A stretch of DNA of 64,000 nt from Macrostomum lignano (Eukaryota): NCBI GenBank assembly GCA_002269645.1, contig NIVC01002050.1:124001-188000 (forward strand). Reading direction: 5' to 3'. Numbering within the stretch: position 1 is the first letter of the stretch; every line of letters begins with the position of its first letter. Below the pieces are notes generated by a model. It had not been told where the DNA came from, made no database searches, and was given only the letters and a program-made list of their open reading frames with translations. This document shows, one piece after another, positions 4,389-45,193 of this stretch. A program made the position numbers and the translations under genes.

Positions 4389-4560
4389 GAAGGCAGCAGG
4401 TCATTGAACCAATTTCTACTCTAAACTAAGCTAGCCCACTGACTTAGAAAACCTATTGAATGTTGCTAGCAGCGTGGCTAGAGGTGTACCTACATACGAG
4501 CTCGTAAGTATACCACAATGAGGCAAAGACATACATACTCAGAGACGAAACATATTTAGG

Positions 4561-6502
4561 GACACAGCAGTATACATAACCAGAGACCGGAGACACAGCA
4601 TACATGCCCAGAGACCGGAGACACAGCATACATGCCCAGAGACCGGAGACACAGCATACATGCCCAGAGACCGGAGACACAGCATACATACACAGAGACC
4701 GGAGACACAGCATATATACACAGAGACCGGAGACACAGCATACATACACAGAGACCGGAGACACAGCATACATACACAGAGACCGGAGACACAGCATACA
4801 TACACAGAGACCGGAGACACAGCATATATACACAGAGACCGGAGACACAGCATACATACACAGAGACCGGAGACACAGCATACATACACAGAGACCGGAG
4901 ACACAGCATACATACACAGAGACCGGAGACACAGCATACATACACAGAGACCGGAGACACAGCATACATACACAGAGACCGGAGACACAGCATACATACA
5001 CAGAGACCGGAGACACAGCATACATACACAGAGACCGGAGACACAGCATACATACACAGAGACCGGAGACACAGCATATATACACAGAGACCGGAGACAC
5101 AGCATATATACACAGAGACCGGAGACACAGCATACATACACAGAGACCGGAGACACAGCATATATACACAGAGACCGGAGACACAGCATACATACACAGA
5201 GACCGGAGACACAGCATATATACACAGAGACCGGAGACACAGCATATATACACAGAGACCGGAGACACAGCATACATGCCCAGAGACCGGAGACACAGCA
5301 TACATGCCCAGAGACCGGAGACACAGCATACATGCCCAGAGACCGGAGACACAGCATACATGCCCAGAGACCGGAGACACAGCATACATGCCCAGAGACC
5401 GGAGACACAGCATACATGCCCAGAGACCGGAGACACAGCATACATACACAGAGACCGGAGACACAGCATACATACACAGAGACCGGAGACACAGCATACA
5501 TACACAGAGACCGGAGACACAGCATACATACACAGAGACCGGAGACACAGCATACATACACAGAGACCGGAGACACAGCATATATACACAGAGACCGGAG
5601 ACACAGCATATATACACAGAGACCGGAGACACAGCATACATGCCCAGAGACCGGAGACACAGCATACATGCCCAGAGACCGGAGACACAGCATACATGCC
5701 CAGAGACCGGAGACACAGCATACATGCCCAGAGACCGGAGACACAGCATATATACACAGAGACCGGAGACACAGCATACATACACAGAGACCGGAGACAC
5801 AGCATACATACACAGAGACCGGAGACACAGCATATATACACAGAGACCGGAGACACAGCATATATACACAGAGACCGGAGACACAGCATACATACACAGA
5901 GACCGGAGACACAGCATATATACACAGAGACCGGAGACACAGCATACATACACAGAGACCGGAGACACAGCATATATACACAGAGACCGGAGACACAGCA
6001 TATATACACAGAGACCGGAGACACAGCATACATGCCCAGAGACCGGAGACACAGCATACATGCCCAGAGACCGGAGACACAGCATACATGCCCAGAGACC
6101 GGAGACACAGCATACATGCCCAGAGACCGGAGACACAGCATACATGCCCAGAGACCGGAGACACAGCATACATGCCCAGAGACCGGAGACACAGCATACA
6201 TACACAGAGACCGGAGACACAGCATACATACACAGAGACCGGAGACACAGCATACATACACAGAGACCGGAGACACAGCATACATACACAGAGACCGGAG
6301 ACACAGCATACATACACAGAGACCGGAGACACAGCATATATACACAGAGACCGGAGACACAGCATATATACACAGAGACCGGAGACACAGCATACATGCC
6401 CAGAGACCGGAGACACAGCATACATGCCCAGAGACCGGAGACACAGCATACATGCCCAGAGACCGGAGACACAGCATACATACACAGAGACCGGAGACAC
6501 AG
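4561..6502. repeat. 28-bp minisatellite (cagagaccggagacacagcatacataca), ~69 copies, three sequence variants, with a higher-order duplication
   Basis: Variants catacataca, catatataca and catacatgcc. The variant order starting at 5075 is repeated starting at 5831 (756 bp = 27 units). Confidence 0.97.
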
Positions 6503-6999
6503 CATACATATACAGGACTCTAAGCAGGAATAACTGTAAACATAACCACAAAATGTATAAAACATAAAGACAAAGTGCACGGCTGCTAAAACTGCAGCAT
6601 CAGGAATTGAATATATTATAAAAAGATGACCAGCAAGTCAACAGTAATGTTTAATGATACAAGCACACTTACTATTAGGTTCGAAATTGAACTTGAAGAT
6701 GTATTAACACACCGATACTGTAATGCTTTTGCGCCCTGAGGAAGCCAGATTTTACAAAACTGTTATTCTAGAGATCCATCGGTAAAAGCTCAAATGGACT
6801 GAAGGTTTCTTTTTACAGGGATATGAAAATGCCAGACTAGCCGATAGTACTAAGAGCGCATAGGCTTACACTAAAATAGCAAATGCATAATATCTGTTTA
6901 AAGAAGACAAAGTACTATTATTAACCGGTGTAGGCGCGGCACAAAGTTGCACTGATTAGTTATTAGAAAGTAAACAGATCTCGCCTAGGACGTGCGATC

Positions 7000-11988: not shown

Positions 11989-12929
11989 GACTAAAACGAA
12001 CGAGGTCACATTTACAGTTTCCTCTGCAATATTATATTAGGCTCAACAGTACTATATTAAAAATAGATCCTGCAATCTCATAGTTTCAAGCATTGTATCT
12101 GCTATCAAAATCTATTTATCTGTATGTAGATATGGAGTTTCTACAATTTTTGTAGATCAGAGACACATACAAGCTATACACAACCTCCTAAATTCTATTG
12201 TACGAGCATCATAGAAGCCTTTGGAAACATAGTTAAGCATTTGCTCTCTCTTTGGTTTGAATTTATTGATGCTCTTTTTTGACAGTTGCTTGTTTTTTGG
12301 TCACTTGTATAAGTTTTTGGTCCTCTTTGATTCTAGTAAATTGCTTTTGTTTCAAATTTTAAATCATTTTATTAATGCCTACTGGCATCGTGGCTTTTAA
12401 TTTGTTATCTTCAGTTGCAAATTTAATACGTGAAAAACTAGGGTTTAGGTCTAGGCTTGACTATTTTTTACTCAAAAATACATATTGCCACATTAATAAT
12501 AAAAAACAAACAGTGATTTTTACCATATAATATAATAATAATAGTACAAAAACTTTTGAATTGGGTACTTTAAACTATAAATTGTCTTGACATAGCTAAA
12601 TATGCCTTATATTAAGTAAGCCATTTTCATAATTTTCATTTCAATAATATATCTTCTACAATATAATTAACTCAATAAATTGTATAAAGCCTAAAAGCTT
12701 GCTTTTTATTACATTAAGGCTTGAAAGTAAGCAATTGAATAGTTAAATTTGCTATAGATTCTTTATATTATAATACATCTAGGAATAAGATCAAAGTTTA
12801 CCTAAATGCTTAGTACATTTTTATATATTTTCATAGGTTTCTATACTTTAAAGGTTTAAGCAAAAAAATGCCAAGTTAAAGATTATTGGGAAAAACAACT
12901 TTTTATAAAAAGAAAAATAGAAATTTATA

Positions 12930-14030
12930 TTCCCGTTGGGGAGCCAAAGAAATGCAACACACATTTTTTAATAAGCTACATGTATCCTTGAAATCTTAAA
13001 AAATCTCTTGTCAAACCTTGTAAGCCTTGACATGTCAGTAATTCCCCCCCACAAACTTTAACATATCAACTTCCCCCCTTGACATCTCAGCAATGCCCCC
13101 AATAAGCCTGGGAAATCTAAAAATATCTGTCAACCTTCTAACCCTAACCCTAGCCTAACCCTAGCTTAACCCTAACCCTAGCCCTAGCCTAACCCTAGCC
13201 TAACCCTAACCCTAACCCTAGCCTAACCCTAAAGCATTAACATTTCAGTAATTCTCTCTAAGAGTCATTACAGCACTACTGCAGTATTTATATTGATTCC
13301 CTGCAAGCCTTGACATTGTAGGGATTCCTAAATGAATCTCTTAACTTCGACATGAAGCTTCTTTTATTTTTTTACATTATGCTTTTTTATCAGTGATCCC
13401 TCCCCTGAGGAGTCATCAAATAATGTAATAAAAACTTTTCAATAAACTACATGTAGCTTCTGACTTTAGCCTTGAAATCTCATTTATACCCCCGTGAGCC
13501 TTGACATCTCAGCTATTCCCCCCGTAAGCCTTGACATGTCAGTGATGCCCCCCATAAACCTTGAAATCTAAAAAATCCCCTGTTAACCTTGAAACCTGAT
13601 AGAATACAACCCTCAACCCAAACCTGACCTAAATCTAACTTTAACCCAACCTAAAGCCTTGAAATCTCAGCAATTCTTCTCCCCTAAGCCTTGACATTTT
13701 ATTGATTCCTTCTTTAAGAATCACAGCACTATAACAATTTCCACCAAGCTTTGACATCATAGCAATTCCCAAATGAATCTTTTAACTTCGACATGACTTT
13801 TCTTTTATGTATACATAGTGCTACTTTTATTTTTTACATGACTCTTCTTCTATCAGCGCCCCTTGTGGCAAGCCAACAAAGAATGCAATAAAAAATTGAG
13901 TAAAGTACATGAAGTTTGAAGTAGCTTCTGACTTTTGCTTTGACATCTCAGAAACCCCCCCCCCTATAATCTCAGTTATTCTCTGAGAACCTTGACGTCT
14001 CAGTTTTTTCTCCCCAGCACAGCATTATAG
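12930..14030. repeat. Old diverged tandem copies (~450-470 bp unit, 2-3 copies) with internal agccttgacat subrepeats
   Basis: Blocks such as aaatgaatct(c/t)ttaacttcgacatga occur at ~13330 and ~13770; tacatg...ccttgaaatc occurs at ~12978 and ~13448. Confidence 0.6.
13132..13231. repeat. Degenerate interstitial telomere-like tract (CCCTAA/CCCTAG/GCCTAA)
   Basis: accctaaccctagcctaaccctagcttaaccctaaccctagccc... Confidence 0.75.
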
Positions 14031-14039
14031 CTTTATTTA

Positions 14040-14595
14040 ATTTTTACATGACACCCTTCATGTCTGACATGATGCTTCTTTTATTCTACCATGATGCTTC
14101 TTAATTTTTAAATGACACTTTCATTAGTTTTTAAATGAGGCTTCTATGATTTTTTCATGACACTTTTATGATTTTTTCATGACGCTTCTATGATTTTTTA
14201 TGACACTCCTATGATTTTTTCATGACGCTTCTATGACTATTTAGATGATGCTTTGATGATTGTTTACATGACGCTTCTATGATTTTTTACATAAAGCTTC
14301 TATGATTGTTTATATGACGCTTCTATGATTGTTTACATGACGCTTCTATGATTGTTTACATGATGCTTCTATGATTTTTTACATGATGCTTCTATGATTT
14401 TTTACATGACGCTTCTATGATTGTTTATATGACGCTTCTATGATTTTCATATGACACTTCTACGATTTTTTATATGACGCTTCTATGATTGTTTACATGA
14501 TGCTTTTATGATTGTTTACATGACGCTTCTATGATTTTTTACATGACGCTTCTATGATTGTTTACATGATGCTTCTATGATTTTTAAATGACACT
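14040..14595. repeat. 23-bp minisatellite (acatgacgcttctatgattgttt), degenerate toward the left
   Basis: tgacgcttc at 14315, 14338 and onward. Confidence 0.9.
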
Positions 14596-14663
14596 TCTTT
14601 TTAAAAAGTCTTTTAGTTTTCCTGACGTTGAAAAGCTTGAATTAAAAAAATATACTCTATGAA

Positions 14664-17600
14664 AAGGGGATGTGAACTTAAGAGTCAGAATGGAGCCTGA
14701 AGCATTGGGTTCCGATTTCTCTACGCCAATCCCTTCATTTGGAGCCAAATAGCTCCCGTTATGCCGAAAACCCGACCACTTTAGCGTTTGGGGATCTCTG
14801 TGGGGAGAAAGGGGATAAATGGGGATTTCATGTGAACTTAAGGCTCTAGAATGGAGCCTGAAGCATTAGGTCCCGATTACTCTACGCCAATCCCTTCATT
14901 TGGAGCCAAATAGCTCCCGTTATGCCAAAAACCCGACCACTTTAGCGTTTGGGGATCTCTGTGGGGAGAAAGGGGATAAATGGGGATTTCATGTGAACTT
15001 AAGGCTCTAGAATGGAGCCTGAAGCATTGGGTCCCGATTTCTCTACGCCAATCCCTTCATTTGGAGCTAAATGGCTCCCGTTATGCCGAAAACCCGACCA
15101 CTTTAGCGTTTGGGGATCTCTGTGGGGAGAAAGGGGATAAATGGGGATTTCATGTGAACTTAAGAGTCAGAATGGAGCCTGAAGCATTGGGTCCCGATTT
15201 CTCTATGCCAATCCCTTCATTTGGAGCCAAATAGCTCCCGTTATGCCGAAAACCCGACCACTTTAGCGTTTGGGGATCTCTGTGGGGAGAAAGGGGATAA
15301 ATGGGGATTTCATGTGAACTTAAGGCTCTAGAATGGAGCCTGAAGCATTGGGTCCCGATTTCTCTACGCCAATCCCTTCATTTGGAGCCAAATAGCTCCC
15401 GTTATGCCGAAAACCCGACCACTTTAGCGTTTGGGGATCTCTGTGGGGAGAAAGGGGATAAATGGGGATTTCATGTGAACTTAAGGCTCTAGAATGGAGC
15501 CTGAAGCATTAGGTCCCGATTACTCTACGCCAATCTCTTCATTTGGAGCCAAATAGCTCCCGTTATGCCGAAAACCCGACCACTTTAGCGTTTGGGGATC
15601 TCTGTGGGGAGAAAGGGGATAAATGGGGATTTCATGTGAACTTAAGGCTCTAGAATGGAGCCTGAAGCATTGGGTCCCGATTTCTCTACGCCAATCCCTT
15701 CATTTGGAGCTAAATGGCTCCCGTTATGCCGAAAACCCGACCACTTTAGCGTTTGGGGATCTCTGTGGGGAGAAAGGGGATAAATGGGGATTTCATGTGA
15801 ACTTAAGAGTCAGAATGGAGCCTGAAGCATTGGGTCCCGATTTCTCTATGCCAATCCCTTCATTTGGAGCCAAATAGCTCCCGTTATGCCGAAAACCCGA
15901 CCACTTTAGCGTTTGGGGATCTCTGTGGGGAGAAAGGGGATAAATGGGGATTTCATGTGAACTTAAGGCTCTAGAATGGAGCCTGAAGCATTGGGTCCCG
16001 ATTACTCTACGCCAATCCCTTCATTTGGAGCCAAATAGCTCCCGTTATGCCGAAAACCCGACCACTTTAGCGTTTGGGGATCTCTGTGGGGAGAAAGGGG
16101 ATAAATGGGGATTTCATGTGAACTTAAGGCTCTAGAATGGAGCCTGAAGCATTGGGTCCCGATTTCTCTACGCCAATCCCTTCATTTGGAGCTAAATGGC
16201 TCCCGTTATGCCGAAAACCCGACCACTTTAGCGTTTGGGGATCTCTGTGGGGAGAAAGGGGATAAATGGGGATTTCATGTGAACTTAAGGCTCTAGAATG
16301 GAGCCTGAAGCATTGGGTTCCGATTTTTCTACGCCAATCCCTTCATTTGGAGCCAAATAGCTCCCGTTATGCCGAAAACCCGACCACTTTAGCGTTTGGG
16401 GATCTCTGTGGGGAGAAAGGGGATAAATGGGGATTTCATGTGAACTTAAGGCTCTAGAATGGAGCCTGAAGCATTGGGTTCCGATTTCTCTACGCCAATC
16501 CCTTCATTTGGAGCCAAATAGCTCCCGTTATGCCGAAAACCCGACCACTTTAGCGTTTGGGGATCTCTGTGGGGAGAAAGGGGATAAATGGGGATTTCAT
16601 GTGAACTTAAGGCTCTAGAATGGAGCCTGAAGCATTGGGTCCCGATTTCTCTACGCCAATCCCTTCATTTGGAGCTAAATGGCTCCCGTTATGCCGAAAA
16701 CCCGACCACTTTAGCGTTTGGGGATCTCTGTGGGGAGAAAGGGGATAAATGGGGATTTCATGTGAACTTAAGAGTCAGAATGGAGCCTGAAGCATTGGGT
16801 CCCGATTTCTCTACGCCAATCCCTTCATTTGGAGCCAAATAGCTCCCGTTATGCCGAAAACCCGACCACTTTAGCGTTTGGGGATCTCTGTAAGGAGAAA
16901 GGGGATAAATGGGGATTTCATGTGAACTTAAGGCTCTAGAATGGAGCCTGAAGCATTGGGTCCCGATTACTCTACGCCAATCCCTTCATTTGGAGCCAAA
17001 TAGCTCCCGTTATGCCGAAAACCCGACCACTTTAGCGTTTGGGGATCTCTGTGGGGAGAAAGGGGATAAATGGGGATTTCATGTGAACTTAAGGCTCTAG
17101 AATGGAGCCTGAAGCATTGGGTCCCGATTTCTCTACGCCAATCCTTCATTTGGAGCCAAATAGCTCCCGTTATGCCGAAAACCCGACCACTTTAGCGTTT
17201 GGGGATCTCTGTGGGGAGAAAGGGGATAAATGGGGATTTCATGTGAACTTAAGGCTCTAGAATGGAGCCTGAAGCATTGGGTTCCGATTTCTCTACGCCA
17301 ATCCCTTCATTTGGAGCCAAATAGCTCCCGTTATGCCGAAAACCCGACCACTTTAGCGTTTGGGGATCTCTGTGGGGAGAAAGGGGATAAATGGGGATTT
17401 CATGTGAACTTAAGGCTCTAGAATGGAGCCTGAAGCATTGGGTCCGATTTCTCTACGCCAATCCCTTCATTTGGAGCTAAATGGCTCCCGTTATGCCGAA
17501 AACCCGACCACTTTAGCGTTTGGGGATCTCTGTGGGGAGAAAGGGGATAAATGGGGATTTCATGTGAACTTAAGGCTCTAGAATGGAGCCTGAAGCATTG

Positions 17601-18700
17601 GGTCCCGATTTCTCTACGCCAATCCCTTCATTTGGAGCCAAATAGCTCCCGTTATGCCGAAAACCCGACCACTTTAGCGTTTGGGGATCTCTGTGGGGAG
17701 AAAGGGGATAAATGGGGATTTCATGTGAACTTAAGGCTCTAGAATGGAGCCTGAAGCATTGGGTCCCGATTTCTCTACGCCAATCCTTTCATTTGGAGCC
17801 AAATAGCTCCCGTTATGCCGAAAACCCGACCACTTTAGCGTTTGGGGATCTCTGTGGGGAGAAAGGGGATAAATGGGGATTTCATGTGAACTTAAGGCTC
17901 TAGAATGGAGCCTGAAGCATTGGGTCCCGATTTCTCTACGCCAATCCTTTCATTTGGAGCCAAATAGCTCCCGTTATGCCGAAAACCCGACCACTTTAGC
18001 GTTTGGGGATCTCTGTGGGGAGAAAGGGGATAAATGGGGATTTCATGTGAACTTAAGGCTCTAGAATGGAGCCTGAAGCATTGGGTCCCGATTTCTCTAC
18101 GCCAATCCCTTCATTTGGAGCTAAATGGCTCCCGTTATGCCGAAAACCCGACCACTTTAGCGTTTGGGGATCTCTGTGGGGAGAAAGGGGATAAATGGGG
18201 ATTTCATGTGAACTTAAGGCTCTAGAATGGAGCCTGAAGCATTGGGTCCCGATTTCTCTACGCCAATCCCTTCATTTGGAGCCAAATAGCTCCCGTTATG
18301 CCGAAAACCCGACCACTTTAGCGTTTGGGGATCTCTGTGGGGAGAAAGGGGATAAATGGGGATTTCATGTGAACTTAAGGCTCTAGAATGGAGCCTGAAG
18401 CATTGGGTCCCGATTTCTCTACGCCAATCCCTTCATTTGGAGCCAAATAGCTCCCGTTATGCCGAAAACCCGACCACTTTAGCGTTTGGGGATCTCTGTG
18501 GGGAGAAAGGGGATAAATGGGGATTTCATGTGAACTTAAGGCTCTAGAATGGAGCCTGAAGCATTGGGTCCCGATTTCTCTACGCCAATCCCTTCATTTG
18601 GAGCCAAATAGCTCCCGTTATGCCGAAAACCCGACCACTTTAGCGTTTGGGGATCTCTGTGGGGAGAAAGGGGATAAATGGGGATTTAATGTGAACTTAA
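14664..18700 (+). repeat. 161-bp satellite, ~25 copies (left arm)
   Basis: Near-identical 160-161 bp monomers; the repeated 63-aa pseudo-ORFs are spaced 161 bp apart. Confidence 0.98.
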
Positions 18701-18759
18701 GACTTTAGGAGCTTCAAATCCTTAAATGACGAGGTGAACAGATTACCTGAGCATTAGCA

Positions 18760-20610
18760 TGGTCATCACGCGATGAACGACTGACCCATCTGGCGACCAG
18801 ATCCATCAATCCCAGGACGACCACACCACAGCCTCTGCTGAAGCGGCCTGCCGCGGGGCAGCCGCAAATCAAACCCAGCGGCCCACCGCCTGCAACGTCA
18901 GGTGCCCCCGACTATGGATCCTCCCGTGTCATCCTCGAACACTGCCTCATCACCTGCTGCACCTGTCATCGACGTTAACGCCCTCCTCACCTCCATGACT
19001 GCGATGATGCAGCAGAATCAGTTGCTCATAGAACAGCTCGCCGCTATATTTATCCTGCCACGACATCAGCGTCGTCGTTCGCTACTAGTGATTGCGATCC
19101 GGCCGCTCTCATCCGCTCCAATGTCCTCCAGAAAGTTCGTCTCCCGACATTCGACGGCATCGACCCTGCCGCATTCCCTGGGTTCTGGGACGCCTTCCTC
19201 TACCGCGTCGACCAATCCAGTCTCAACGTCGACAAGTTCGAACCACTCCGCGGTCTGCTATTCGGCCCCGCCCTCAGAAAGCTGGGCGCCCTCGATGCCT
19301 GCCAACCCATCGCTTACGCTGAGGCCTGCCGCGTCCTCCAGGCTAACTGCGCCGACGCCCAAGAATGCTTGCTTTCAACGCCTCGCGCTATAATGCAGCT
19401 TCGCTTTCGACGTAGACGAGTTAAGCGACGTAGGGCGCTAACCCCTCTCCTCGTCCCTCCGAATGCTTCGCTTCCACCGCCAACCAGCAGCAGCAGAAGC
19501 CCAGCCTCCCATGCCTCTATTGCGACACTTCCGACCATGCCACCATGTCTTGCTGCAATATCCGCAAGCCCGATGACCGGCTTAAAATAGTTCTGAACAA
19601 AAACCTTTGCGACAATTGCTTTCGCCAACACCACAACACAACACGCCCTGCCGTTCCTGCCGCGACACCCGACACTGTCTTGTGTGTGCGACGACCACAT
19701 CGCACCTCGCTGCTCTAGCCATCGCTCGCCTAAGACAGGCCAAAATTCCCACGTTAATTCGGGCTGACGCCGACTCCAAAGAAACAGCCAACTCCCAAGT
19801 CTCTGCCGCAGCCGACGGAGGTCTCGTGCCGACCATCATGGCTACTTTCCGGGCGAAGGCCGTCAACCCGAAAGATGGCCGCTCCGTCGACTGCACAATT
19901 TTTCTCGATTCTCGACTCTGGCTGCTCATACTCGCATCTCGACGGCACTGTTGCCCACAACCTTGGTCTCAAAGCCGCTAAGAGACTCACGATAGCCGCC
20001 TCCACCTTACACTCGTACTCGTACTTCCGCGTTAGATTACTGCGGACCTCGTCAGTTTTGACCTCCAGGCCCCAGACAGCCGTCGCTGGACAAATCACAT
20101 CCCTCGCCTCCGACTAGCAGCTAGCAGCCCCGATCCATATACCGGCCGTTAAGCTCCCTGAAGATGTCCTTAACACCCTCAGCAGTGTCAACAACGGCGT
20201 CTGCAACCTTCCGCCTGATTATGATACAGACGGTACTCTTGACCTCATCCTCGGTGGTGACTGAACCAGTTACTCATCGGCCCTGCCGTTCCTGCCCTCG
20301 CTCCGACTCTAACAGCCTACTTGACGCCCTTCGAAGCCATCCTCAACAATGCTATCACTGACACGGATGCCGTGTCACGGACGCAGCATAAACAGCTTCC
20401 TCGGGTCCTCGCAGGCCTTTCAGGTCCTTATCGCTAACACCTGCCTCAACATGAACAACGATAATGGCTCCTCGAAGTTCTCAGAATCGCGAAGGACGCA
20501 GGAAGCATGGCCCCAAAGACAACGAGCTGACTTGACGCCTTCTCGCGTCCATTACCCGTGACTAAGATGGCCGCATCTCCGTCAACCCGCCATTCAAAGA
20601 CGGCGATGCT
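18760..20610 (+). mobile_element. Decayed BEL/Pao LTR-retrotransposon gag-protease fragment (frameshifts and stops)
   Basis: Manual translation gives KVRLPTFDGIDPAAFPGFWDAFLYRVDQSSLNVDKFEPLRGLLFGPALRKL (DUF1759-like Gag), CLYCDTSDHATMSC..CDNCFRQHH..CRSC..CLVC (Pao zinc knuckles), F/ILDSGCSYSHLDGTVAHNLGL (aspartic protease), LDLILGGD, and DGRISVNPPFK. Confidence 0.85.
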
Positions 20611-21822
20611 TTGGTTCCAAATGAAAGGATTGGCGTAGAGAAATCGGGACCCAATGCTTCAGGCTCCATTCTAGAGCCTTAAGTTCACATGAAATCCCCA
20701 TTTATCCCCTTTCTCCCCACAGAGATCCCCAAACGCTAAAGTGGTCGGGTTTTCGGCATAACGGGAGCTATTTGGCTCCAAATGAAGGGATTGGCGTAGA
20801 GTAATCGGGACCTAATGCTTCAGGCTCCATTCTAGAGCCTTAAGTTCACATGAAATCCCCATTTATCCCCTTTCTCCCCACAGAGATCCCCAAACGCTAA
20901 AGTGGTCGGGTTTTCGGCATAACGGGAGCCATTTGGCTCCAAATGAAGGGATTGGCGTAGAGAAATCGGGACCCAATGCTTCAGGCTCCATTCTAGAGCC
21001 TTAAGTTCACATGAAATCCCCATTTATCCCCTTTCTCCCCACAGAGATCCCCAAAAGCTAAAGCGGTCGGGTTTTCGGCATAACGGGAGCCATTTAGCTC
21101 CAAATGAAAGGATTGGCGTAGAGAAATCGGGACCCAATGCTTCAGGCTCCATTCTAGAGCCTTAAGTTCACATGAAATCCCCATTTATCCCCTTTCTCCC
21201 CACAGAGATCCCCAAACGCTAAAGTGGTCGGGTTTTCGGCATAACGGGAGCTATTTGGCTCCAAATGAAGGGATTGGCGTAGAGTAATCGGGACCTAATG
21301 CTTCAGGCTCCATTCTAGAGCCTTAAGTTCACATGAAATCCCCATTTATCCCCTTTCTCCCCACAGAGATCCCCAAACGCTAAAGTGGTCGGGTTTTCGG
21401 CATAATGGGAGCCATTTAGCTCCAAATGAAGGGATTGGCGTAGAGAAATCGGGACCCAATGCTTCAGGCTCCATTCTAGAGCCTTAAGTTCACATGAAAT
21501 CCCCATTTATCCCCTTTCTCCCCACAGAGATCCCCAAACGCTAAAGTGGTCGGGTTTTCGGCATAACGGGAGCTATTTGGCTCCAAATGAAAGGATTGGC
21601 GTAGAGAAATCGGGACCCAATGCTTCAGGCTCCATTCTAGAGCCTTAAGTTCACATGAAATCCCCATTTATCCCCTTTCTCCCCACAGAGATCCCCAAAT
21701 GCTAAAGTGGTCGGGTTTTCGGCATAACGGGAGCCATTTGGCTCCAAATGAAGGGATTGGCGTAGAGAAATCGGGACCCAATGCTTCAGGCTCCATTCTG
21801 ACTCTTAAGTTCACATCCCCTT
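20603..21822 (-). repeat. 161-bp satellite, ~7.5 copies in inverted orientation (right arm)
   Basis: Reverse complement of the 14664-18700 monomer. Confidence 0.98.
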
Positions 21823-22193
21823 TGAACCATTGTTGCTGCATTTAGCAGTTCAGTTTGTTCACCTCTCTAGGCTAGGCCTAGCTTTCTCGTTTCGATAACA
21901 TCAAATTTTGCACTTATATAATTCAACACTTTAAAATCCAAGCATAGAGTAAATCATACGAAGCAGTTATGATAATCAATTTCTCAGTCAGTCAGTATCA
22001 GTTAACAATATGGTTACGCAATTTAAATCAAGTCTGGTGCTGCTGCCAGGATTTTCTTTTTTACCCGAGACAAGGTGAAAAATTGCACCCTATACTTTCA
22101 TGGTGCAATTTTAAGGCTCAAAGTGCAATTTCTCTTTTTTCTTATTTAAAGGCAGTGCAAATGAGACTTTAATAGAAAAATAGGTTATGAGAC

Positions 22194-22384
22194 CAGTGGC
22201 GTAGGGAGGGGGGGATCAGGGGGGATGTATCCCCCCCCCCCGAAGAGCCTGACCAAAACTTTTTTGTTGCACTTTTTCGCTATACATGCTACCATGTGAG
22301 CACTTTTACCTTGGTGTATCCCCCCCTGTAGGAAATTCACCTTGGTTTATCCCCCCCCGTAGGAAATTCCTGGCTACGCCCCTG
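22194..22384. mobile_element. hAT-type MITE (191 bp) with 8-bp TSD
   Basis: Ends cagtggcgtag...ctacgcccctg; TSD tatgagac at 22186-22193 and 22385-22392. Confidence 0.88.
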
Positions 22385-25092
22385 TATGAGACCACATCTA
22401 AACTGCACCTGTTTCAATTTTAGGGTGCAATTTTAAAATTTAAGGTGCATACGCTAGATACGCACACTTTACACAAAAAATAAACCTAGGCTGCTGCTAT
22501 TTGTACTTTCTGGCCTAATGGGCAGATTACAGGAAAATGAAGCACCATAAATCAAATATGCAGGTGCTTGGTAGCTTTGAATGGCCAGTCAAGTTTCCAA
22601 TTCTATGAAAATACCAAACTGCAAACACTCAAATTCAGAATATAGAGAAAATTAGAAAAAAAACTTCTTTTTATTGATTGTTTTACTAAATGAAAATTTT
22701 TTTGAAATGCAAGTCTATTAGTTAATTTTTGACTTGCACTAATATGCACTATGCTTTCTATAGTCAGCACTAGCCTAATCAATTTTTTACACCCACTGAC
22801 TAGGCCCACAAGGGGGGATAATATCTTCACTTACTCTATGCTACTGCCTATGGTGCTAAAATGAGTATCTGCAACACTAAAATAAGTGCCTATGGCACTA
22901 TTAGTACTGTAAACAAGAAACTGTAAACAAGACTTGTCACCGAAGTATCCAAACTTGTCACCTAAGTTTCCAAAATTGTCACCGAAATGTCTTGTCACCG
23001 ACTTGACCAGTAACCTAATCAAGCATAATAATAATACTAAAGTGGAACATTTTTTTGCTATAAATGTGAAGAAGACTAATAAATGCACTTTTTTATCTTT
23101 GTAGTGTATTTTTTCATAGAGCCTTAGGCTCTCCAAAGATTTGCTTAGAAAAAAGGTTCCTCGACCCCTTGGAGGTTTTTATATATGAAGCAACGAGTTA
23201 AGCAGTACTAAAAGTAATTGGTTCGAATAGTTACTTTTTGTTTGACGATTCCGAATAATTCTTAAGCTATATAGCCAATCAATTAGCTAAACTTAACTTA
23301 TTATAAGAATCAACTTCAACGTTAAATTTTTTCACTTTAGAAGGCTCAAACTAATGTTCGTTTAAAAAACATAACAAAGTTTATGTTGCTATTTAGTATT
23401 AAAAGGCATAATCACTATATGAATATATGCGTAACATTACTGGTATTTTTTACGTTGTCTTGATTACCTTCTATTTGAGAACATTGTTGAGAACATTGAG
23501 AAGAATGTTGAGAACATTGATGCAGCTGGGCCTCGAATGACGTCAAATAAGTTTTACAAGTCGCGACGACGAAAGAATTTTCGAGACCTCGAAGTCGAAT
23601 TAATGACGTCAAACACGATCGAAAAGCGATCGACGCCAAAAAAATTCGAAAATTCGACATCAAAAGCCCAAGAAGGACTACCCCCCCCCCAACATTGGGG
23701 GGGGGGGTTTACTGTATATTTTGCCCAGACCAAAAGTCTAGCTGCTTCTGTATGATTGATAACTGCTTACATGTATGTAGGTATCCCAGTTATAGATGTA
23801 CATGTACAGTACATGGCACATGATAACCAGAACGTTGCGACCAGTTCCAGCAGCTAGGGACACTTCTTTAACCAGGAATTCATCAATCGTCAAATCGCGA
23901 TATTTCTTCATCGGACTGGCGTTTAACTCTGAACTCTGAAAAATTTTCAAATTCAAGTTTCAATACATTCAATAAAATATTCATGCATGTGATATTGATA
24001 ATATTTTAGGTTTTATTAAAATAATTATGCAATAATTTCCCTTTTGTTTAAAGAGAGCTTGTTGCCATGACGAATTTTTCATTACGTACATTTTCTTTAA
24101 AACGTTGGTATTTAAGTGTACGGTCTGCCCACTTGCGCTCGATCATTTTCAGTAATCAACCTCAAATTATTAAAGACTACATTCTACAATAAATTGGCAA
24201 TAACCGTAACTAGCTCATTAGCGTTGTAATTGTAACATAAATTTTCGTACTTTCACTGTGCTATGTATCTATGAAACTGTGACATATAAAACTATATAAA
24301 CCACAAGTTGAAAGAATGACTTAATTTTTTCTAAAAATCTGAAATAATTATTGTAAACCTGCACTTTTGACTTTATTTTTTATTAAGTTTTTGCAATTGT
24401 AACTAACTTTGTTTTTTATATCAATAGTCAACTAAAACACTATATGCTGCCAGTGCTACATATAAGTGTTACATAAAATTTAATTTGAAAACACTGAGAC
24501 ACAAATAGTTTAATCGGAGTCTGCAATTTTTTACTGTCTCATTTTTGTTTACGGTTCGTATTATAAATTTGTATCTTATTAAGCAAGGAAGGCTATGTAT
24601 TCTCTGCACATTATTTCCTGTGATAAAACGGTTGAAAACTATATCAAATCGATTTTGTTTTCTGTCGACATTTAATCATCTATTTACTATTTCTTTGGAA
24701 ACCTCTTTGCAATGACTTTTGCTTTCAGTGTATTTCCATATGACATCTATTTACTAACAGTTTTTTTAAAGATTTGCCAAAAATTTACACAATATTTTTA
24801 GCTTTTAAAATTAAACTTTATTTGCTTCAAATTTTCTATTCTTCACACTCAAAAATAGCCACTATAAAAAATTTAAAAATTTAAAAAGTTAAAAATTTTA
24901 TAGTATAGAATGTAAGATTAGTGGAAATTATTATCATGTATATAATCATTTTTTTAATTCAGAACCACATACTTGTTTTCTAATAGACTAGCTGATATGA
25001 ATGTCTGAAGCACATTTATTAAATATAAATTCTTTGTCTCTCAGAATCAGTTATTTCATACCTTTATAACCATCATCTTTGCAGCCAACGCA

Positions 25093-26037
25093 ATGGCTAA
25101 ATTAGCCGCCAATGAGTCACTTGAATCCCAGAGCAAGTCAAAAACTAGCGCAAATCTCACTAACGCCTGGCGCGAGCACATGCAGAGCCGCAGCTTCACC
25201 ACCGAGCCGCATCACCTGCACAGGCTTGGCATCTTGGCCTACTTCTACTGCCTCCTTGCCACCCCGGCCCTCTTCTTAACCCGCGTGCTGCCGCAACTCT
25301 CACCAGCTGACAGCGGTTGGTGGGCCGCCGGCTTGGCCACTGCCTTCCTGGTGGCGGAGAATTTTCTCAACTATCGGGCCTGCATAATTGGGCATCACGA
25401 GCACAATGTGGTGCACTGCTTCCACTGCCAGCGGACCAGCCCCGCCGTCCTGGCCTGGCAGGCTGGGGGCGACAGACACCAGAGATGCCTCGCCTGCCAG
25501 ACGGAGTCGCCGCCGCGATCCGAGCACTGCCGCCTGTGCAACCTGTGCGTCATGAGGCGCCACTTTCACTGCTACCTGCTCTGCTGCTGCATCGGGCACC
25601 GGACTCACGGCCACTTCCTTGCGCTATGCCTGTACAGCACCGTCGGCCTGGCGACCAGCTCGCTGGCCTTCGCCATCTACGCCTTCGATGTTGGCGGCGG
25701 CTGGTCCGGCCTGCTGCTGCCGGCGGCCGCTCTCCGGTTCGCCGCTGGCTCAGCGCCGGCCGCCCTGCCCGCCGCGGTGTTCAGCCTCTACATCCAGCTG
25801 ACCTGCCTGGCCATCGCCGCCATCTACGGCTTCCTGCAGTTGCAGCTGCTGTTGCGCAATCAGACTCCGGCCGAGATTGCCGCCATGGACCGGCGCTACC
25901 GCCTGGATAGTTGCTATGACAACCTGCGCGCTTCGCTTGGCCCGGCTCGGTACTGGCCGCTGTTATTACTTTATCCGATTAGAATTGAGCCGGACTCTGA
26001 CGGCTGCAACTGGCGGCTCAGATCAAAGAGAAGTTGA
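25093..26037 (+). CDS. ZDHHC-family palmitoyltransferase-like protein (ZDHHC22/24-like), intronless, with HFHC in place of DHHC
   Basis: CLACQTESPPRSEHCRLCNLCVMRRHFHCYLLCCCIGHRTHGHFL matches the DHHC cysteine-rich domain. Two predicted TM helices on each side; TPAE at the TTxE position. Confidence 0.88.
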   Translation: MAKLAANESLESQSKSKTSANLTNAWREHMQSRSFTTEPHHLHRLGILAYFYCLLATPALFLTRVLPQLSPADSGWWAAGLATAFLVAENFLNYRACIIGHHEHNVVHCFHCQRTSPAVLAWQAGGDRHQRCLACQTESPPRSEHCRLCNLCVMRRHFHCYLLCCCIGHRTHGHFLALCLYSTVGLATSSLAFAIYAFDVGGGWSGLLLPAAALRFAAGSAPAALPAAVFSLYIQLTCLAIAAIYGFLQLQLLLRNQTPAEIAAMDRRYRLDSCYDNLRASLGPARYWPLLLLYPIRIEPDSDGCNWRLRSKRS

Positions 26038-29955: not shown

Positions 29956-32887
29956 TCACTCCGCTCGGTCGGGCAGCTTGAGGCCGGCCGGGAAGCTGGC
30001 AAAGTCGGTCAGCAGCATGCGCACAATCTCGGCCAGGATGGCGTGAAAATTCACCAGAGCCGGCGCAGTCAGCTGGGGCACATTGTGCCGCATGAAGAAC
30101 AGCCTCCGGCACAGCTCCTTCAGCTGGCAATGCAGGCTTTGAGTTGCTCGAAGCATCAAAGGCGTCACTTCTTCCAGCAGCATGCCGTGCGTGTGGCCCG
30201 CGCCTCTGTTAGTGCGGCGAGAGGTGCTCCTTCATTTCATATACCTGAATCCTTCATTTCATATACCTGAATCCTTCATTTCATATACCTGAATCCTTCA
30301 TTTCATATACCTGAATCCTTCATTTCATATACCTGAATCCTTCATTTCATATACCTGAATCCTTCATTTCATATACCTGAATCCTTCATTTCATATACCT
30401 GAATCCTTCATTTCATATACCTGAATCCTTCATTTCATATACCTGAATCCTTCATTTCATATACCTGAATCCTTTATTTTATATACCTGAATCCTTCATT
30501 TCATATACCTGAATCCTTCATTTCATATACCTGAATCCTTCATTTCATATACCTGAATCCTTCATTTCATATATTGATACCTGAATCCTTCATTTCATAT
30601 ACCTGAATCCTTCATTTCATATACTTGAATCCTTCATTTCATATACCTGAATCCTTCATTTCATATACCTGAATCCTTCATTTCATATACCTGAATCCTT
30701 TATTTTATATACCTGAATCCTACATTTCATATACCTGAATCCTACATTTCATATACCTGAATCCTTCATTTCATATACCTGAATCCTTCATTTCATATAC
30801 CTGAATCCTTCATTTCATATACCTGAATCCTTCATTTCATATACCTGAATCCTTTATTTTATATACCTGAATCCTACATTTCATATACCTGAATCCTACA
30901 TTTCATATACCTGAATCCTTCATTTCATATACCTGAATCCTTCATTTCATATACCTGAATCCTTCATTTCATATACCCGAATTCTACATTGCTCACCTGA
31001 ACCCTACATTTTTCATCGGAACTCTACATTTCTTACCCAACTTCAGACAAAGCATGAGCTTCTATGGAACCCGGAATCGCTAACTTACAAGTGCTACTTA
31101 GTCAGTAGTCTATACTGAAAAATCTCCCCACAAAAACAAGAATTCTCATCCCAGCTCACAAATTCGGACAGAGCTGCGTCTGCACCGCATCGCACTCGTC
31201 CGTTTTCGGCTCGCACCACTTGATCTTCCGGCCGCCGCCGCCGCCGCCAGCAGCGGGAGCACCGGTCCGCAGGTGCCGCCGGCCTCGCCGACGCTGGCCG
31301 CCGGTTTTGGCCAACAGGCGCCGGAAGGTGTCCGTCTTCAGCGAGGCGTACGGATTGTCGCCCTGGCAGCCCCTGCGCCCGGTGGCCCGCAGCCGCTCTG
31401 CCTGTTTGGCCGTGGCGTCAGCGCAGGCCGACATCAGGTTGGCCGCCTTAGCCGCCGCCGCAGCCGGTTTTTTATGCCGGACCGCCGGCCGGGCTTTCGG
31501 CTTGGCCGCATAGATGGCGGCGCTGCCGCAGGCGTCCTTCTTGGAGCAGCGGCCGCCGCTGCCCGGAGTGCTGTTGTTCTCGCTCTTGTTCAGCTGCCGC
31601 GGCTTCGTCGGCGCCGACTGCTGGCTGCTGCAAATGTTTGATGTAGAAGGACGGGAGACTTGGTTTCTTAGAAAATCTTTTGAAGGCTGGCTTGCTAAAA
31701 GATGAATTTTCTGTCCTATTTAAGAAGTTCTTTCGCAAATCTTGATATTGGTTCAACTTCAGCTTGACTTTTAGCTTAAATTCATCTTAACTTCAGCTTA
31801 ACTTCAGCTTGACTTTTAGCTTAAATTCATCTTAACTTCAGCTTAACTTCAGCTTGACTTTTAGCTTAAATTCAGCTTGACTTCAGCCTAATTTCAGCTT
31901 GACTTCAGCTTGACTTCAGCTTGACTTCAGCCTAATTTCAGCTTGACTTCAGCTTGACTTCAGCTTGACTTCAGCCTAATTTCAGCTTGACTTCAGCTTA
32001 ACTTCAGCTTAACTTCAGCTTGACTTCAGCTTAACTTCAGCTTAACTTCAGCTTAACTTCAGCTTGACTTCAGCTTGACTTCAGCTTGACTTCAGCTTGA
32101 CTGCAGCTTAACTTCAGCTTAACTTCAGCTTGACTTCAGCTTAACTTCAGCTTGATTTCAGCTTGACTTCAGCTTGACTTCAGCTTGACTTCAGCCTAAT
32201 TTCAGCTTAACTTCAGCTTGACTTCAGCTTAACTTCAGCTTAACTTCAGCTTAACTTCAGCTTAACTTCAGCTTGACTGCAGCTTAACTTCAGCTTAACT
32301 TCAGCTTGACTTCAGCTTAACTTCAGCTTGATTTCAGCTTGACTTCAGCTTGACTTCAGCTTGATTTCAGCTTGACTTCAGCTTGACTTCAGCTTGACTT
32401 CAGCCTAATTTCAGCTTGACTTCAGCTTGACTTCAGCTTGACTTCAGCCTAATTTCAGCTTGATTTCAGCTTGACTTCAGCTTGACTTTTAGCTTAAATT
32501 CAGCTTGACTGCGGCTTGACTTCATCTCCAGGGCAACTCAGATTTGCCCGGAGAAAAGACAACATTCACAGTGGAATGTTGAAAAATTTTAAAAGCATTA
32601 CATGCTTCTATCGCATACACTCGTATTTGAACTGATTTATAGAGGCCGACTCACAAGCAGCTGCCAGCCATGCCAGTGAGAGTGGACGAGCCGCCATAGA
32701 GTCTGCTGCTGCTGCTGCTGCTCTGTCTGCTGACTGTCCGGCCAACCTCTCTGATCTTCCGTTGGACTTGCTTTCTGTCGGAGAGTTTGGGAAAATAGCA
32801 GTTGGCATTCACTTTGGCGTGACTTCTGTATTGGTGAATGATTCATCTTGAGACTTACCCATGCGCCTGCGACACGCTATGACCCAT
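29956..32887 (-). CDS. Orphan protein, ~305 aa, 4 exons, with N-terminal MGxxxS myristoylation motif
   Basis: Exons 32887-32859, 32825-32655, 31627-31160, 30205-29956, all GT-AG and phase 2, total 918 nt, reading MGHSVSQAHG|SHAKVNANCYFPKL...LCPNL|GAGHTHGMLLEEV...LPDRAE*. No family recognised. The first intron is only 33 nt. Confidence 0.6.
30229..30985. repeat. Intronic 22-bp minisatellite (ttcatttcatatacctgaatcc), ~34 copies
   Basis: Period 22, read directly. Confidence 0.97.
31756..32522. repeat. Intronic 11-bp minisatellite ((g/a)acttcagctt), ~70 copies
   Basis: Period 11, read directly. Confidence 0.97.
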
Positions 32888-38340: not shown

Positions 38341-38970
38341 GAGACCTACCTGGCTCGGGCTGAGAACTGTAGCCACGAACTTCCCACGCAAATCCATTGC
38401 ACAGCGCCCGACCGTCTCCGGGGCTCAATAATGACTTTTCCCACGGGAGAAAATGCAATGCGATATGCGAGACAGGCAAGGGGAGACGGCAGCGGCCATC
38501 TGATTAACAGTGTCAGGTGGCACTCAAGGATAGCCAGTAGCAGCAATGTTTGTCCACTATGCGCCCGAGCAGCTGCCACCGCTTTGAAGGGTCTGGCTGA
38601 TGGCATGTGCTCTGTGCTGTTGTTGTTGAAACACACTGCCGCGTAAGAGCGGATACACTGACTGCCGCGGTCCGAATGCCCGTTGTTGATGCTGATGAGC
38701 TGTCAGGCCTGTTGCTAGGGGGGTTTCCTACAAGTTTTCTTTTCCTGCTTCAGCTGGGCGCTGGCATTGAAGAAGGGCGAATGACGGGGAAGCAGCAGCT
38801 GCCGCATCCCCTTCATCTCCATTCTTTCAAGTTTCACGATGCCATTTGGTGCGTGCGATATGCCACTGAGGCAAAACACAAGTTGTAGCGCTTCTAATGG
38901 GCAAGTAAGCATAATATTGCCCCCTGCTGGGAATTATGAAAATTGCTGAAAGTAAGTGCTGGAGTGATGC

Positions 38971-40625: not shown

Positions 40626-41229
40626 GATATAGCCTTAGTCTTGGAAAGAGAACCATCTTGGAAAAAATCATTTTTGGCGCGTCTCCCATGCAGGTGTCCA
40701 AATCTGAATTGCATCATCACTTGTGGCAAATTTTTGTGGGGATAAATACATGGGACATGGGCGAGACAGAGAGACTCCACTGTGGCTGTGTGTTGCGTTC
40801 CGCAGACCCGGTCGAGATGGGGCGTTGGGAGGCTGGGCCCGCGTATTCCAGGTGACCTCTCGCCTATGTAATTTGGCAAAACTGTTGCCCACGTTTTTAC
40901 TGCGCGCTTTAATAATCTCTCAGCTGATCGAATTTCAGTACGGCTTAGCCCAGCCAGCAAGCATAATTGATTTATGACAGTAATTGACCCGCAGAAGCAG
41001 CTCATCAGCCAGGTGGCCTGAGGCGGGGCTGAACAGAGAAATGCGAGACCTTGAAGCATGCTCAATATGAGGGAGAAAGCGATTGAGCAGTCTGGGGCTG
41101 AATGGCAGTTTAGAGAATTTGGTCGGACGATGCAAAAGTTGACAGAAGCCGTGAGAAACTGCGGGTTGAGAAAGGCTGGGGCTTCGAGATTGAAGTTTTG
41201 GGACTCCTCTGGAGGCCAGGAGGTCGTAG

Positions 41230-44615: not shown

Positions 44616-45193
44616 CTCCAACCTCCAAATCCACCTTTTTTGCCCCGTAATTTTCGCCTCATCTGACAGACACAACTTCCAGTCCTCAGTTCACAATTGT
44701 CAGTGAAGAGCACACGAAGCATAATCTGCGGCCCTCATCAAGTTGCCCTCCCACTAAGCCAGCTTCACACTAATTCAATGCAGCGCATCGAAGCACCTGC
44801 AGTTGGTTTTCTCTCACCTGCTCTCTTTCTCTTCTTCTGTCTTCCTGCTCGCCTCTTGGCCTGTCTGCAACAGCAGAGAGAGTCTTTAGAACTCTCGCTA
44901 GAAGCAATTGCCAACCAGACGATAGGGTGAGTGCCGAAGCGCAATCATGCGCCTTGAGCACACTAAGACTGCGTGTGTGTATGTATGTATGTGTGTCTGT
45001 GTGTGTGGCACCTCCTTCAAGCGCCACCAGGTGGGTCGAGGGTGCAGCTCTCACACCTTTTTCGAGCGTGCAAACACACTTGTCCCGTCGGTCTTATCAC
45101 AATGGACAATACCGAATCGGAGACTGTGGAGTTACTTAATAAATGCACTGCATCTATGAGGGGTGGGGGAATGGCTCTTAGCTTTTCTCATTC

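What the first reader, a model, noticed from the sequence alone, without database searches (positions are those of the whole stretch)
14660..21826. 7-kb foldback element whose inverted arms are 161-bp satellite arrays, with a 4-bp TSD and a captured BEL/Pao core
Seen: ~25 monomers on + (14664-18700) and ~7.5 monomers on - (20603-21822). Both outer ends carry the same rearranged terminal junction (aaggggat|gtgaacttaagagtcagaatgg), which lacks the aaatggggatttcat segment present inside normal monomers. The ends are flanked by the direct repeat TGAA. Known: Drosophila FB/Galileo-type elements have long arms built of tandem subrepeats; 4-bp TSDs occur with Kolobok, Sola, piggyBac and Ginger superfamilies. 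Inference: the satellite moves as, and is amplified inside, a non-autonomous DNA transposon carrying a dead retroelement as cargo, giving a route for dispersing a nucleosome-length satellite. I cannot assign the superfamily.
Basis: partly seen in the sequence, partly recalled or inferred. Interest (0 to 1): 0.82.

Follow-up and report, generated by a model that had tools for sequence, protein, structure and literature searches.

The report
Satellite-armed foldback transposon, inserted without duplication
A 7.2-kb mobile DNA element in the flatworm Macrostomum lignano has inverted arms made of a 161-bp satellite, and a sister copy of the locus shows it slotted in exactly between AAA and TTT with no target-site duplication, which is the signature of Spy-type transposons and not of the 4-bp-duplication families first proposed.

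Summary
The structure is real. A 25-unit (+) array and a 7.5-unit (-) array of a 160/161-bp repeat flank a 1.9-kb dead retroelement piece, and both outer ends carry the same terminus.

The window comes from Macrostomum lignano (Mlig_3_7), a recent polyploid with about three copies of most loci. One sister copy (L004) is collinear with both flanks at 93-96% identity and lacks the element. Bases that are adjacent in L004 align to window 14665 and 21821.

The insertion is therefore 14666-21820 (7,155 bp, GGGGATGTGAAC...GTTCACATCCCC). It sits between GAAAA and TTTGAA with no target-site duplication.

TSD-free insertion at AAA|TTT is the published hallmark of Spy (PHIS) transposons. These have not been reported in flatworms, and their long TIRs are described as lacking subrepeats.

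Each arm is a 145-bp terminal unit followed by copies of that unit plus a 15-bp linker. The cargo is the Gag-protease third of a BEL/Pao element.

Only one copy was available and no transposase was found, so the Spy assignment is inferred.

The parts
14663..14665 (.). Host AAA half of the AAA|TTT target, immediately left of the element
   Evidence: L004 empty site reads ...TATGAAAA|TTTGAATC...; the blastn HSP ends at window 14665
14666..21820 (.). Whole inserted element, 7,155 bp, GGGGATGTGAAC...GTTCACATCCCC, with no TSD
   Evidence: Adjacent L004 bases (841/842 of the segment) align to window 14665 and 21821. The satellite is absent from L004
14666..14810 (+). Left terminal unit, 145 bp. This is the transposon end. 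It lacks the 15-bp linker found in internal units
   Evidence: The first 45 nt are identical to the right end, with 3 differences over the full 145 nt
14811..18708 (+). Left arm array: 24 full 160/161-bp units plus a 39-bp partial unit. Every unit boundary reads GAGAAA|GGGGAT
18709..20609 (+). Central cargo: degenerate BEL/Pao fragment (Gag DUF1759-like, zinc knuckle, aspartic protease), split over three frames by frameshifts and stops
   Evidence: phmmer hits to polyproteins that carry DUF1759 + Peptidase_A17 + DUF5641 + integrase. tblastn covers only residues ~16-685 of ~1,750-1,930 aa. Direct Pfam hits are weak
20610..21675 (-). Right arm array: 6 full 161-bp units plus a 100-bp partial inner unit
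21676..21820 (-). Right terminal unit, 145 bp, the mirror of the left terminal unit
21821..21823 (.). Host TTT half of the target
14067..14598 (-). 23-bp minisatellite of the dispersed host repeat into which the element inserted (left flank)
   Evidence: Collinear with L004. A paralogous uninterrupted copy lies at L002 4734-7679
21827..22043 (-). Unique part of the same host repeat (right flank)

Best explanation
Window 14666-21820 is a non-autonomous, foldback-type class II transposon.

Shown:
- It is a discrete 7,155-bp insertion, present in one of the three paralogous copies of this M. lignano locus and absent from another.
- It is bounded by identical inverted termini (GGGGATGTGAAC...).
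- It sits exactly between host AAA and TTT, with no duplication or loss of target bases.
- Each arm is a 145-bp terminal unit followed by tandem 160/161-bp units. These units are the terminal unit plus a 15-bp linker, so every unit repeats the end sequence behind an AAA|GGGGAT junction.
- The centre is a dead Gag-protease fragment of a BEL/Pao retroelement.

Inferred:
- The element is mobilised in trans by a Spy-like DDE transposase of the PHIS superfamily. That is the only described eukaryotic cut-and-paste group that integrates at AAA|TTT without a TSD.
- The arms arose by tandem duplication of the TIR end and changed length by unequal exchange, giving 25 versus 7.5 units. Exchange between arms keeps them equally similar.
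- As in Galileo and Tetris, the repeated ends may act as extra transposase-binding sites.
- The retroelement piece is passive cargo, or the remnant of a nested insertion in the loop.
For: - Empty site. L004 (NIVC01000974.1) aligns to window 13822-14665 at 93.4% and, from the very next base, to 21821-22185 at 95.4%. It is also collinear with window 12000-13900 at 96% and contains no satellite.
- Ancestral state is empty. A paralogous copy of the host repeat in L002 is also uninterrupted across the site (E=5e-28).
- Target. AAA|TTT positions make up only 0.09% of the window and 0.3% of the local intergenic DNA.
- Spy hallmarks from the literature. AAA|TTT target, no TSD, TIRs of 9-1,474 bp (PMC4122938), shown experimentally for cgSpy (PMC11304231).
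- Termini. Validated Spy ends start GGG, GGA, GAG or TCG after AAA; ours starts GGGG.
- Arms. Unit phasing and unit lengths are, the pseudo-ends. Divergence is 1.9% and 2.3% within the arms and 2.1% between them.
- Three-copy genome context: PMC10733133; DHHC paralogs are 99% identical.
Against: - Only one copy of the element could be examined, so target preference rests on n=1.
- No transposase is present in the element, the window or the fetched loci.
- The loosely conserved Spy terminal motif GGANNNNG is not fully met (GGGGATGT).
- Spy surveys report Arthropoda, Mollusca, Cnidaria and rotifers only. None report flatworms.
- Described long Spy TIRs have no subrepeat structure.
- A transposase-independent blunt integration cannot be formally excluded.
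Confidence: 0.6

Rival explanations
1. One reading: a foldback element of a superfamily that makes 4-bp TSDs (Kolobok, Sola, piggyBac or Ginger), with TGAA as the duplicated target.
For: TGAA lies directly outside AAGGGG...CCCCTT on both sides.
Against: The empty site in L004 already contains both TGAA copies (TGAAAATTTGAA). Removing 14666-21820 restores it base for base. Such a 4-mer arrangement occurs at about 0.9% of random sites. The target is not TTAA, so piggyBac and Kolobok do not fit.
Confidence: 0.02
2. Transposase-independent insertion. A palindromic or hairpin-capped piece of extrachromosomal satellite DNA, with a retroelement fragment in its loop, was captured at a double-strand break by blunt end-joining. 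The AAA|TTT context is coincidental.
For: Only one copy was seen and no transposase was found. Long inverted repeats readily form hairpin-ended linear molecules (general knowledge). The scan for other AAA|GG..CC|TTT TIR pairs in about 85 kb found none.
Against: Both junctions fall at the same nucleotide of two identical 145-bp terminal units that differ from all internal units. There is no loss, filler or microhomology at the target. The chance of landing on AAA|TTT is 0.1-0.3%.
Confidence: 0.12
3. A TSD-less element of another kind: a Helitron/Helentron-type rolling-circle element carrying a satellite, or an undescribed TIR transposase family that also makes no TSD.
For: Helitrons insert between A and T without a TSD, and Helentrons carry satellite-like arrays in oysters (PMC7492417, listed).
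Against: The ends are GGGG.../...CCCC with more than 500 bp of perfect-register inverted repeat. They are not 5'-TC...CTRR-3' with a 3' hairpin. Helentrons insert at T|T. The arrays are inverted rather than in one orientation.
Confidence: 0.1
4. Assembly artefact: a chimeric or palindromic long-read mis-join, or a satellite array that was collapsed or inverted in assembly.
For: Mlig_3_7 is a long-read assembly of a repeat-rich neopolyploid and is described as error-prone for copy number (PMC10733133). Inverted satellite arrays are hard to assemble.
Against: The arms are unequal (25 versus 7.5 units). They are separated by a non-palindromic 1.9-kb unique centre. They are joined on both sides to unique flanks that are contiguous in L004, and the breakpoints fall exactly at matching termini and at an AAA|TTT site. 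An artefact would not produce this.
Confidence: 0.04

Closest known systems
Spy transposons (PHIS superfamily: PIF/Harbinger-ISL2EU-Spy), e.g. Spy-6_BMo, cgSpy
   Same: [quoted passage not shown] TIRs can be very long (up to 1,474 bp). The terminus starts with GG/GGG directly after the host AAA, as in cgSpy AAA|GGGCCTGG. Non-autonomous derivatives are common.
   Different: The arms are kilobase tandem arrays of the end itself, whereas described long Spy TIRs have no subrepeat structure. GGANNNNG is not fully matched. No transposase was found. The host phylum (Platyhelminthes) is not among those reported. Only one copy was examined.
Foldback elements whose TIRs contain tandem repeats: Drosophila FB, Galileo (P superfamily), Tetris (D. 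virilis)
   Same: Long inverted arms built of tandem subrepeats, arms of unequal and variable length, a non-coding or unrelated middle domain, and non-autonomous copies. Tetris TIR-220 repeats also form satellite-like arrays, and Galileo repeats carry extra transposase-binding sites (PMC4079207).
   Different: Those elements make TSDs (Tetris 8-10 bp; from general knowledge FB 9 bp and Galileo 7 bp) and have a unique terminal flanking domain outside the repeats. Here the array starts at the very first nucleotide of the element and there is no TSD.
Helentron-borne satellite-like arrays in Crassostrea gigas
   Same: Nucleosome-length tandem repeats dispersed as part of a non-autonomous DNA element.
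   Different: A rolling-circle element with asymmetric ends and a single-orientation array inserted at T|T. It is not a TIR foldback inserted at AAA|TTT.
BEL/Pao LTR retrotransposons (applies to the cargo only)
   Same: The cargo's Gag stretch is 56-58% identical to polyproteins that carry DUF1759, Peptidase_A17, DUF5641 and integrase.
   Different: Only about the first third (Gag-protease) is present, it is frameshifted, and it has no LTRs, RT, RNase H or integrase. It is a dead fragment, not a 'core'.

Membership tests
Spy (PHIS superfamily) | Insertion precisely between host 5'-AAA and TTT-3' | tested here: met
   Filled site GAAAA|GGGG...CCCC|TTTGAA and empty site GAAAATTTGAA in L004. One insertion only. 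Chance of this target is 0.1-0.3%.
Spy (PHIS superfamily) | No target-site duplication or modification | tested here: met
   Adjacent L004 bases align to window 14665 and 21821. Removing 14666-21820 restores the empty site exactly.
Spy (PHIS superfamily) | Terminal inverted repeats, 9-1,474 bp | tested here: met
   The outermost inverted repeat is 502 nt at 98%, with 45 nt perfect at the tips. The arms total 4.0 and 1.2 kb, longer than any reported and built of subrepeats.
Spy (PHIS superfamily) | Terminal 5'-GGANNNNG-3' motif (relatively conserved) | tested here: inconclusive
   Ours is GGGGATGT. It matches GG, but position 3 is G and position 8 is T. Validated Spy ends also deviate: cgSpy GGGCCTGG, cvSpy GAGCCAAG, hsSpy TCGGGATT.
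Spy (PHIS superfamily) | A family master copy encodes a D(79-80)D(44-62)E transposase with an N-terminal HTH | not testable with these tools
   There is no transposase ORF in the element or window. The M. lignano genome could not be searched with an external transposase query.
Foldback elements (structural class: FB, Galileo, Tetris) | Long inverted arms made of tandem subrepeats around a variable middle domain | tested here: met
Foldback elements (FB/Tetris as MuDR-like; Galileo as P-like) | TSD of 7-10 bp | tested here: not met
   Zero TSD. The Tetris TSD of 8-10 bp comes from PMC4079207.
   Both TGAA copies pre-exist in the empty site, and no bases are duplicated.
Helitron | 5'-TC ... CTRR-3' ends, a 3' subterminal hairpin, no TIRs, insertion at A|T without a TSD | tested here: not met
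   Insertion at A|T without a TSD is met. The ends, however, are GGGGAT.../...ATCCCC and are long TIRs.
BEL/Pao LTR retrotransposon (cargo) | Gag (DUF1759), Pao-type protease, RT, RNase H and integrase between LTRs | tested here: inconclusive
   Gag-protease homology to true BEL/Pao polyproteins is clear (E down to 2e-24). RT, RNase H, integrase and LTRs are absent. So the cargo is a fragment derived from that family, not a functional member.
Satellite DNA | Long head-to-tail arrays present at many loci or in heterochromatin | not testable with these tools
   Only these two arrays were seen, and none in L002-L004. A metagenome scan gave 0 hits. No M. lignano satDNA literature was found.

The most novel reading that the evidence does not exclude
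M. lignano harbours a recently active Spy-type, TSD-less transposon lineage, the first in Platyhelminthes. Its TIRs have been converted into kilobase satellite arrays by tandem duplication of the transposon end itself. Every 161-bp monomer then carries an AAA|GGGGAT pseudo-terminus and is a potential transposase binding or cleavage site. Alternative end usage and transposition would both seed and disperse a nucleosome-length satellite.
Probability: 0.35. Interest if true: 0.72.

Novelty: new variant of a known kind. Interest (0 to 1): 0.55.

Why it matters
How satellite DNAs are born and spread to new loci is a long-standing question. Foldback transposons (Tetris, Galileo) are among the few documented sources.

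This locus offers an unusually clean case. The insertion has base-exact boundaries, verified by an empty sister locus in a neopolyploid genome. The satellite monomer is derived from the transposon end itself.

If the Spy-type assignment holds, it would do three things:
- Extend the only known TSD-less cut-and-paste group to flatworms.
- Show that this group's notoriously variable TIR length can arise by tandem amplification of the end.
- Flag a recently active DNA transposon in M. lignano, a model organism.

It is also a practical caution. Short direct repeats beside TIRs are not TSDs until an empty site has been seen.

Tried and rejected
- Protein search with the 84-aa ORF that runs through the satellite, to find other arrays in public assemblies: no candidates.
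- Exact look-up of the 314-aa DHHC ORF: not on record. It worked after the 316-aa gene model was recovered.
- L002/L003 (NIVC01002274.1) as an empty site: it is collinear with the window only from 23279 rightwards. It served only as a paralogous copy of the host repeat.
- Rfam on 13000-23500: no RNA family, so the monomer is not recognisably derived from a tRNA, 5S or snRNA. ARAGORN found no tRNA.
- Metagenome-collection scan with a 40-bp monomer core: 0 hits.
- Look-ups of P0003 and P0004 (M. lignano-like BEL/Pao Gag relatives), to reach other cargo copies: not on record.
- Scan of the window and L003 for other AAA|GG...CC|TTT TIR pairs: only this element and its internal pseudo-ends.
- Mirror-image test of the arms: the terminus-to-terminus register (97.1%) is no better than shifted registers (97.0-98.2%). 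The arms are therefore not a simple recent inverted duplication.
- An idea that 18709-18900 holds an LTR end plus a primer-binding site was dropped. tblastn shows coding similarity reaching back to 18759.
- Literature searches for an M. lignano satellite or for PHIS elements found nothing specific.
- L002 and L004 never appeared in the scripting folder, so their relevant segments were typed in.
Full report

Yes, in its descriptive part. Tandem Repeats Finder reports a 161-bp repeat at 14670-18708 (25.1 copies, 97% matches) and the reverse complement of the same unit at 20610-21816 (7.5 copies). The inverted-repeat search gives many registers at 97-99%. The outermost is 14663-15164 against 21322-21823 (502 nt, 98%).

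The 30-bp terminal string AAGGGGATGTGAACTTAAGAGTCAGAATGG occurs exactly twice in 64 kb, at 14664(+) and 21822(-), with none expected by chance. Splitting the arrays into units confirms that both outer ends lack the 15-bp AAATGGGGATTTCAT found at every internal unit junction. TGAA does lie outside AAGGGG...CCCCTT on both sides.

**2. Source and context**

The flanking DHHC palmitoyltransferase gene (25093-26037; Pfam E=8e-21) identified the window as Macrostomum lignano assembly Mlig_3_7 (GCA_002269645.1), contig NIVC01002050.1.

A protein 99% identical to it (4 differences in 316 aa) is encoded on two other contigs. This fits the published finding that this neopolyploid assembly holds about three paralogous copies of most loci, with roughly 2-2.6% SNP divergence and many large indels (PMC10733133).

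The window itself is gene-dense. It holds URO-D, Tudor, DHHC, Rdx-family, C2H2 zinc-finger, CFAP96 and F-box genes, and it is packed with minisatellites.

**3. The empty site**

L004 (NIVC01000974.1) was reached through the neighbouring Rdx-family gene. It carries the element's right-flank sequence and no 161-bp satellite.

Read in window orientation, it runs ...GTTGAAAAGCTTTAATTAAAAAAATTATACTCTATGAAAATTTGAATCATTGTTGTTGCATTTAGCAG....

- blastn aligns positions 1-841 of this 1,200-bp segment to window 13822-14665 (93.4%).
- Positions 842-1200 align to window 21821-22185 (95.4%).
- A further 1.9 kb to the left is collinear at 96%, including an interstitial telomere-like block.

The only large difference in this intergenic region is therefore window 14666-21820, 7,155 bp, GGGGATGTGAAC...GTTCACATCCCC. 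The filled site is GAAAA[element]TTTGAA and the empty site is GAAAATTTGAA. No base is duplicated or lost.

Such a 4-mer arrangement occurs at about 0.9% of random positions.

**4. Insertion or deletion?**

The flanks belong to a dispersed repeat: a unit of about 230 bp followed by a 23-bp minisatellite. A paralogous copy at a non-homologous position and in the opposite orientation (L002 4734-7679) aligns continuously across the reconstructed junction (E=5e-28).

So the uninterrupted state is ancestral, and the window carries an insertion.

The third copy of the locus (L002/L003) is collinear with the window only from 23279 rightwards. It says nothing about the site itself.

**5. Anatomy**

Phased from the true terminus, each arm begins with a 145-bp terminal unit. 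The two terminal units differ at 3 positions, and their first 45 nt are identical. After it come 160/161-bp units: 24 full units plus 39 bp on the left, and 6 full units plus 100 bp on the right.

An internal unit equals the terminal unit with AAATGGGGATTTCAT inserted after GGGGAT. The array therefore starts at the first nucleotide of the element, and every unit boundary reads GAGAAA|GGGGAT. That mimics the junction between host AAA and the terminus.

Units carrying the terminal-type variant (AAGAGTCAGAATGG, 160 bp) recur at units 3, 7 and 13 of the long arm.

The terminus-to-terminus register (97.1%) is no better than shifted registers (97.0-98.2%). Mean divergence is 1.9% and 2.3% within the arms and 2.1% between them. 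So the arms are not a simple recent mirror duplication. They have turned over by unequal exchange, with no arm-specific homogenisation.

The inner ends fall at different unit phases (39 and 100 nt).

**6. The centre**

Direct Pfam hits are sub-threshold: DUF1759 at E=0.3 and Asp_protease_2 at E=0.003-0.005.

An exhaustive phmmer search with the in-frame Gag stretch (19075-19389) found 13 proteins, with E-values down to 9e-35. The five long polyproteins tested all carry DUF1759, Peptidase_A17 (Pao), DUF5641 and integrase domains.

tblastn places the cargo on residues ~16-685 of these ~1,750-1,930-aa proteins. It lies on the + strand and is spread over three frames. Nothing beyond the protease is present, and there is no other BEL/Pao DNA in the window.

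So it is a dead Gag-protease fragment, not a 'core'. Whether it was captured, or is the remnant of a nested insertion that was later truncated, cannot be told from one copy.

**7. Mechanism**

Precise integration between AAA and TTT without a TSD is the published defining property of Spy transposons. It was established through paralogous and orthologous empty sites (PMC4122938) and confirmed experimentally for cgSpy in human cells (PMC11304231).

AAA|TTT positions make up 0.09% of this window and 0.3% of the local intergenic DNA.

The other PHIS groups make AT or TWA duplications (PMC4482050). Helitrons also lack TSDs and insert at A|T, but they have TC...CTRR ends and no TIRs.

Spy TIRs range from 5 to 1,474 bp. 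Validated termini after AAA begin GGGCCTGG, GGACCCCG, GGACAATG, GAGCCAAG or TCGGGATT. Ours, GGGGATGT, fits that loose pattern but not the full GGANNNNG consensus.

I therefore infer mobilisation in trans by a Spy-like DDE transposase. This step is not shown, for four reasons: only one copy was accessible, no transposase was found, Spy has not been reported in flatworms, and described long Spy TIRs lack subrepeats.

**8. Comparison and novelty**

Structurally this is a foldback element like FB, Galileo and Tetris. Tetris has 220-bp TIR repeats that seeded a satellite, but it makes 8-10-bp TSDs and has a unique outer TIR domain (PMC4079207).

By its integration chemistry the element looks like Spy. 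I did not find the combination described: satellite arms that start at the terminal nucleotide, TSD-free AAA|TTT integration, and a flatworm host.

I rate it a new variant of a known kind. Interest is moderate, and it is limited by n=1 and the missing transposase.

**9. Rivals**

- The 4-bp-TSD model is refuted by the empty site.
- Transposase-independent capture of a hairpin-ended satellite fragment is possible. It does not explain the identical specialised termini, the clean junction or the AAA|TTT target.
- Mis-assembly is unlikely, given the unequal arms, the unique centre and the exact junctions. Arm copy numbers should still be checked with long reads.

Noticed in passing
window 14067-14663 and 21827-22043 (both on -); L002 4734-7679 (+): The element inserted into a dispersed repeat made of a ~230-bp unique part, an A/T-rich spacer and a 23-bp minisatellite (window ATGTAAACAATCATAGAAGCGTC-like; L002 ATGTCAAACATTAAAGAGCCACC, ~116 copies). 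The L002 copy contains a tRNA-3'-end-like string (GGGTTCGAATCTTGGTAGCGCCA), although ARAGORN calls no tRNA. It may be a SINE-like or otherwise mobile minisatellite carrier.
   Followed up: partly
window 1-64000 (e.g. 4560-6515, 30228-31011, 38970-40626, 41229-42498, 43353-44622, 58830-60129, 61483-62841): Minisatellite density is extraordinary. More than 25 distinct arrays with periods of 11-109 bp, each often 0.5-2 kb, fill most intergenic spaces. The paralogous loci differ mainly in the lengths of these arrays.
   Followed up: partly
window 13138-13232; also conserved in L004: An interstitial telomere-like block, (CCCTAA/CCCTAG)n of about 95 bp, lies 1.4 kb left of the insertion and is shared by the sister locus.
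   Followed up: no
window 14811-18670 and 20709-21675 (every unit boundary): Each monomer carries GAGAAA|GGGGATAAATGGGGAT. This is an internal copy of the 'host AAA + terminus GGGGAT' junction, plus a second GGGGAT 10 bp later. Any left-arm/right-arm pair therefore forms an AAA|GG...CC|TTT pseudo-element (175 such pairs). It may reflect how the array was born, or it may allow alternative end usage.
   Followed up: partly
window 23279 / L002 8194 (= L003 reverse complement 4178): A sharp break of collinearity. Rightwards the two paralogs are 97-98% identical, and leftwards they are unrelated. L004 stays collinear with the window at least across 12000-14665 and 21821-22185. This points to a large rearrangement or insertion specific to contig NIVC01002274.1.
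   Followed up: no
L002 1621-2370: A GC-rich coding island encodes a family-B DNA polymerase-like peptide (…IYCDTDS… motif), interrupted by a short intron-like gap. It is probably a fragment of a Maverick/Polinton-type or similar element upstream of the DHHC paralog.
   Followed up: no
P0003 (UniProt A0A1I8HAS4, M. lignano, 358 aa): This annotated 'uncharacterized protein' contains a BEL/Pao Gag segment. It is 63-68% identical to the cargo and hits DUF1759 at E=4e-4. Unrelated sequence sits on either side, so it is probably a chimeric gene model over a retroelement fragment.
   Followed up: partly
window 14980-15234, 15623-15877, 16588-16842 (+): The satellite carries repeated 84-aa ATG-initiated ORFs that span 1.6 units. 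They have no homologues in the 5.8-billion-protein collection and are almost certainly not coding.
   Followed up: yes
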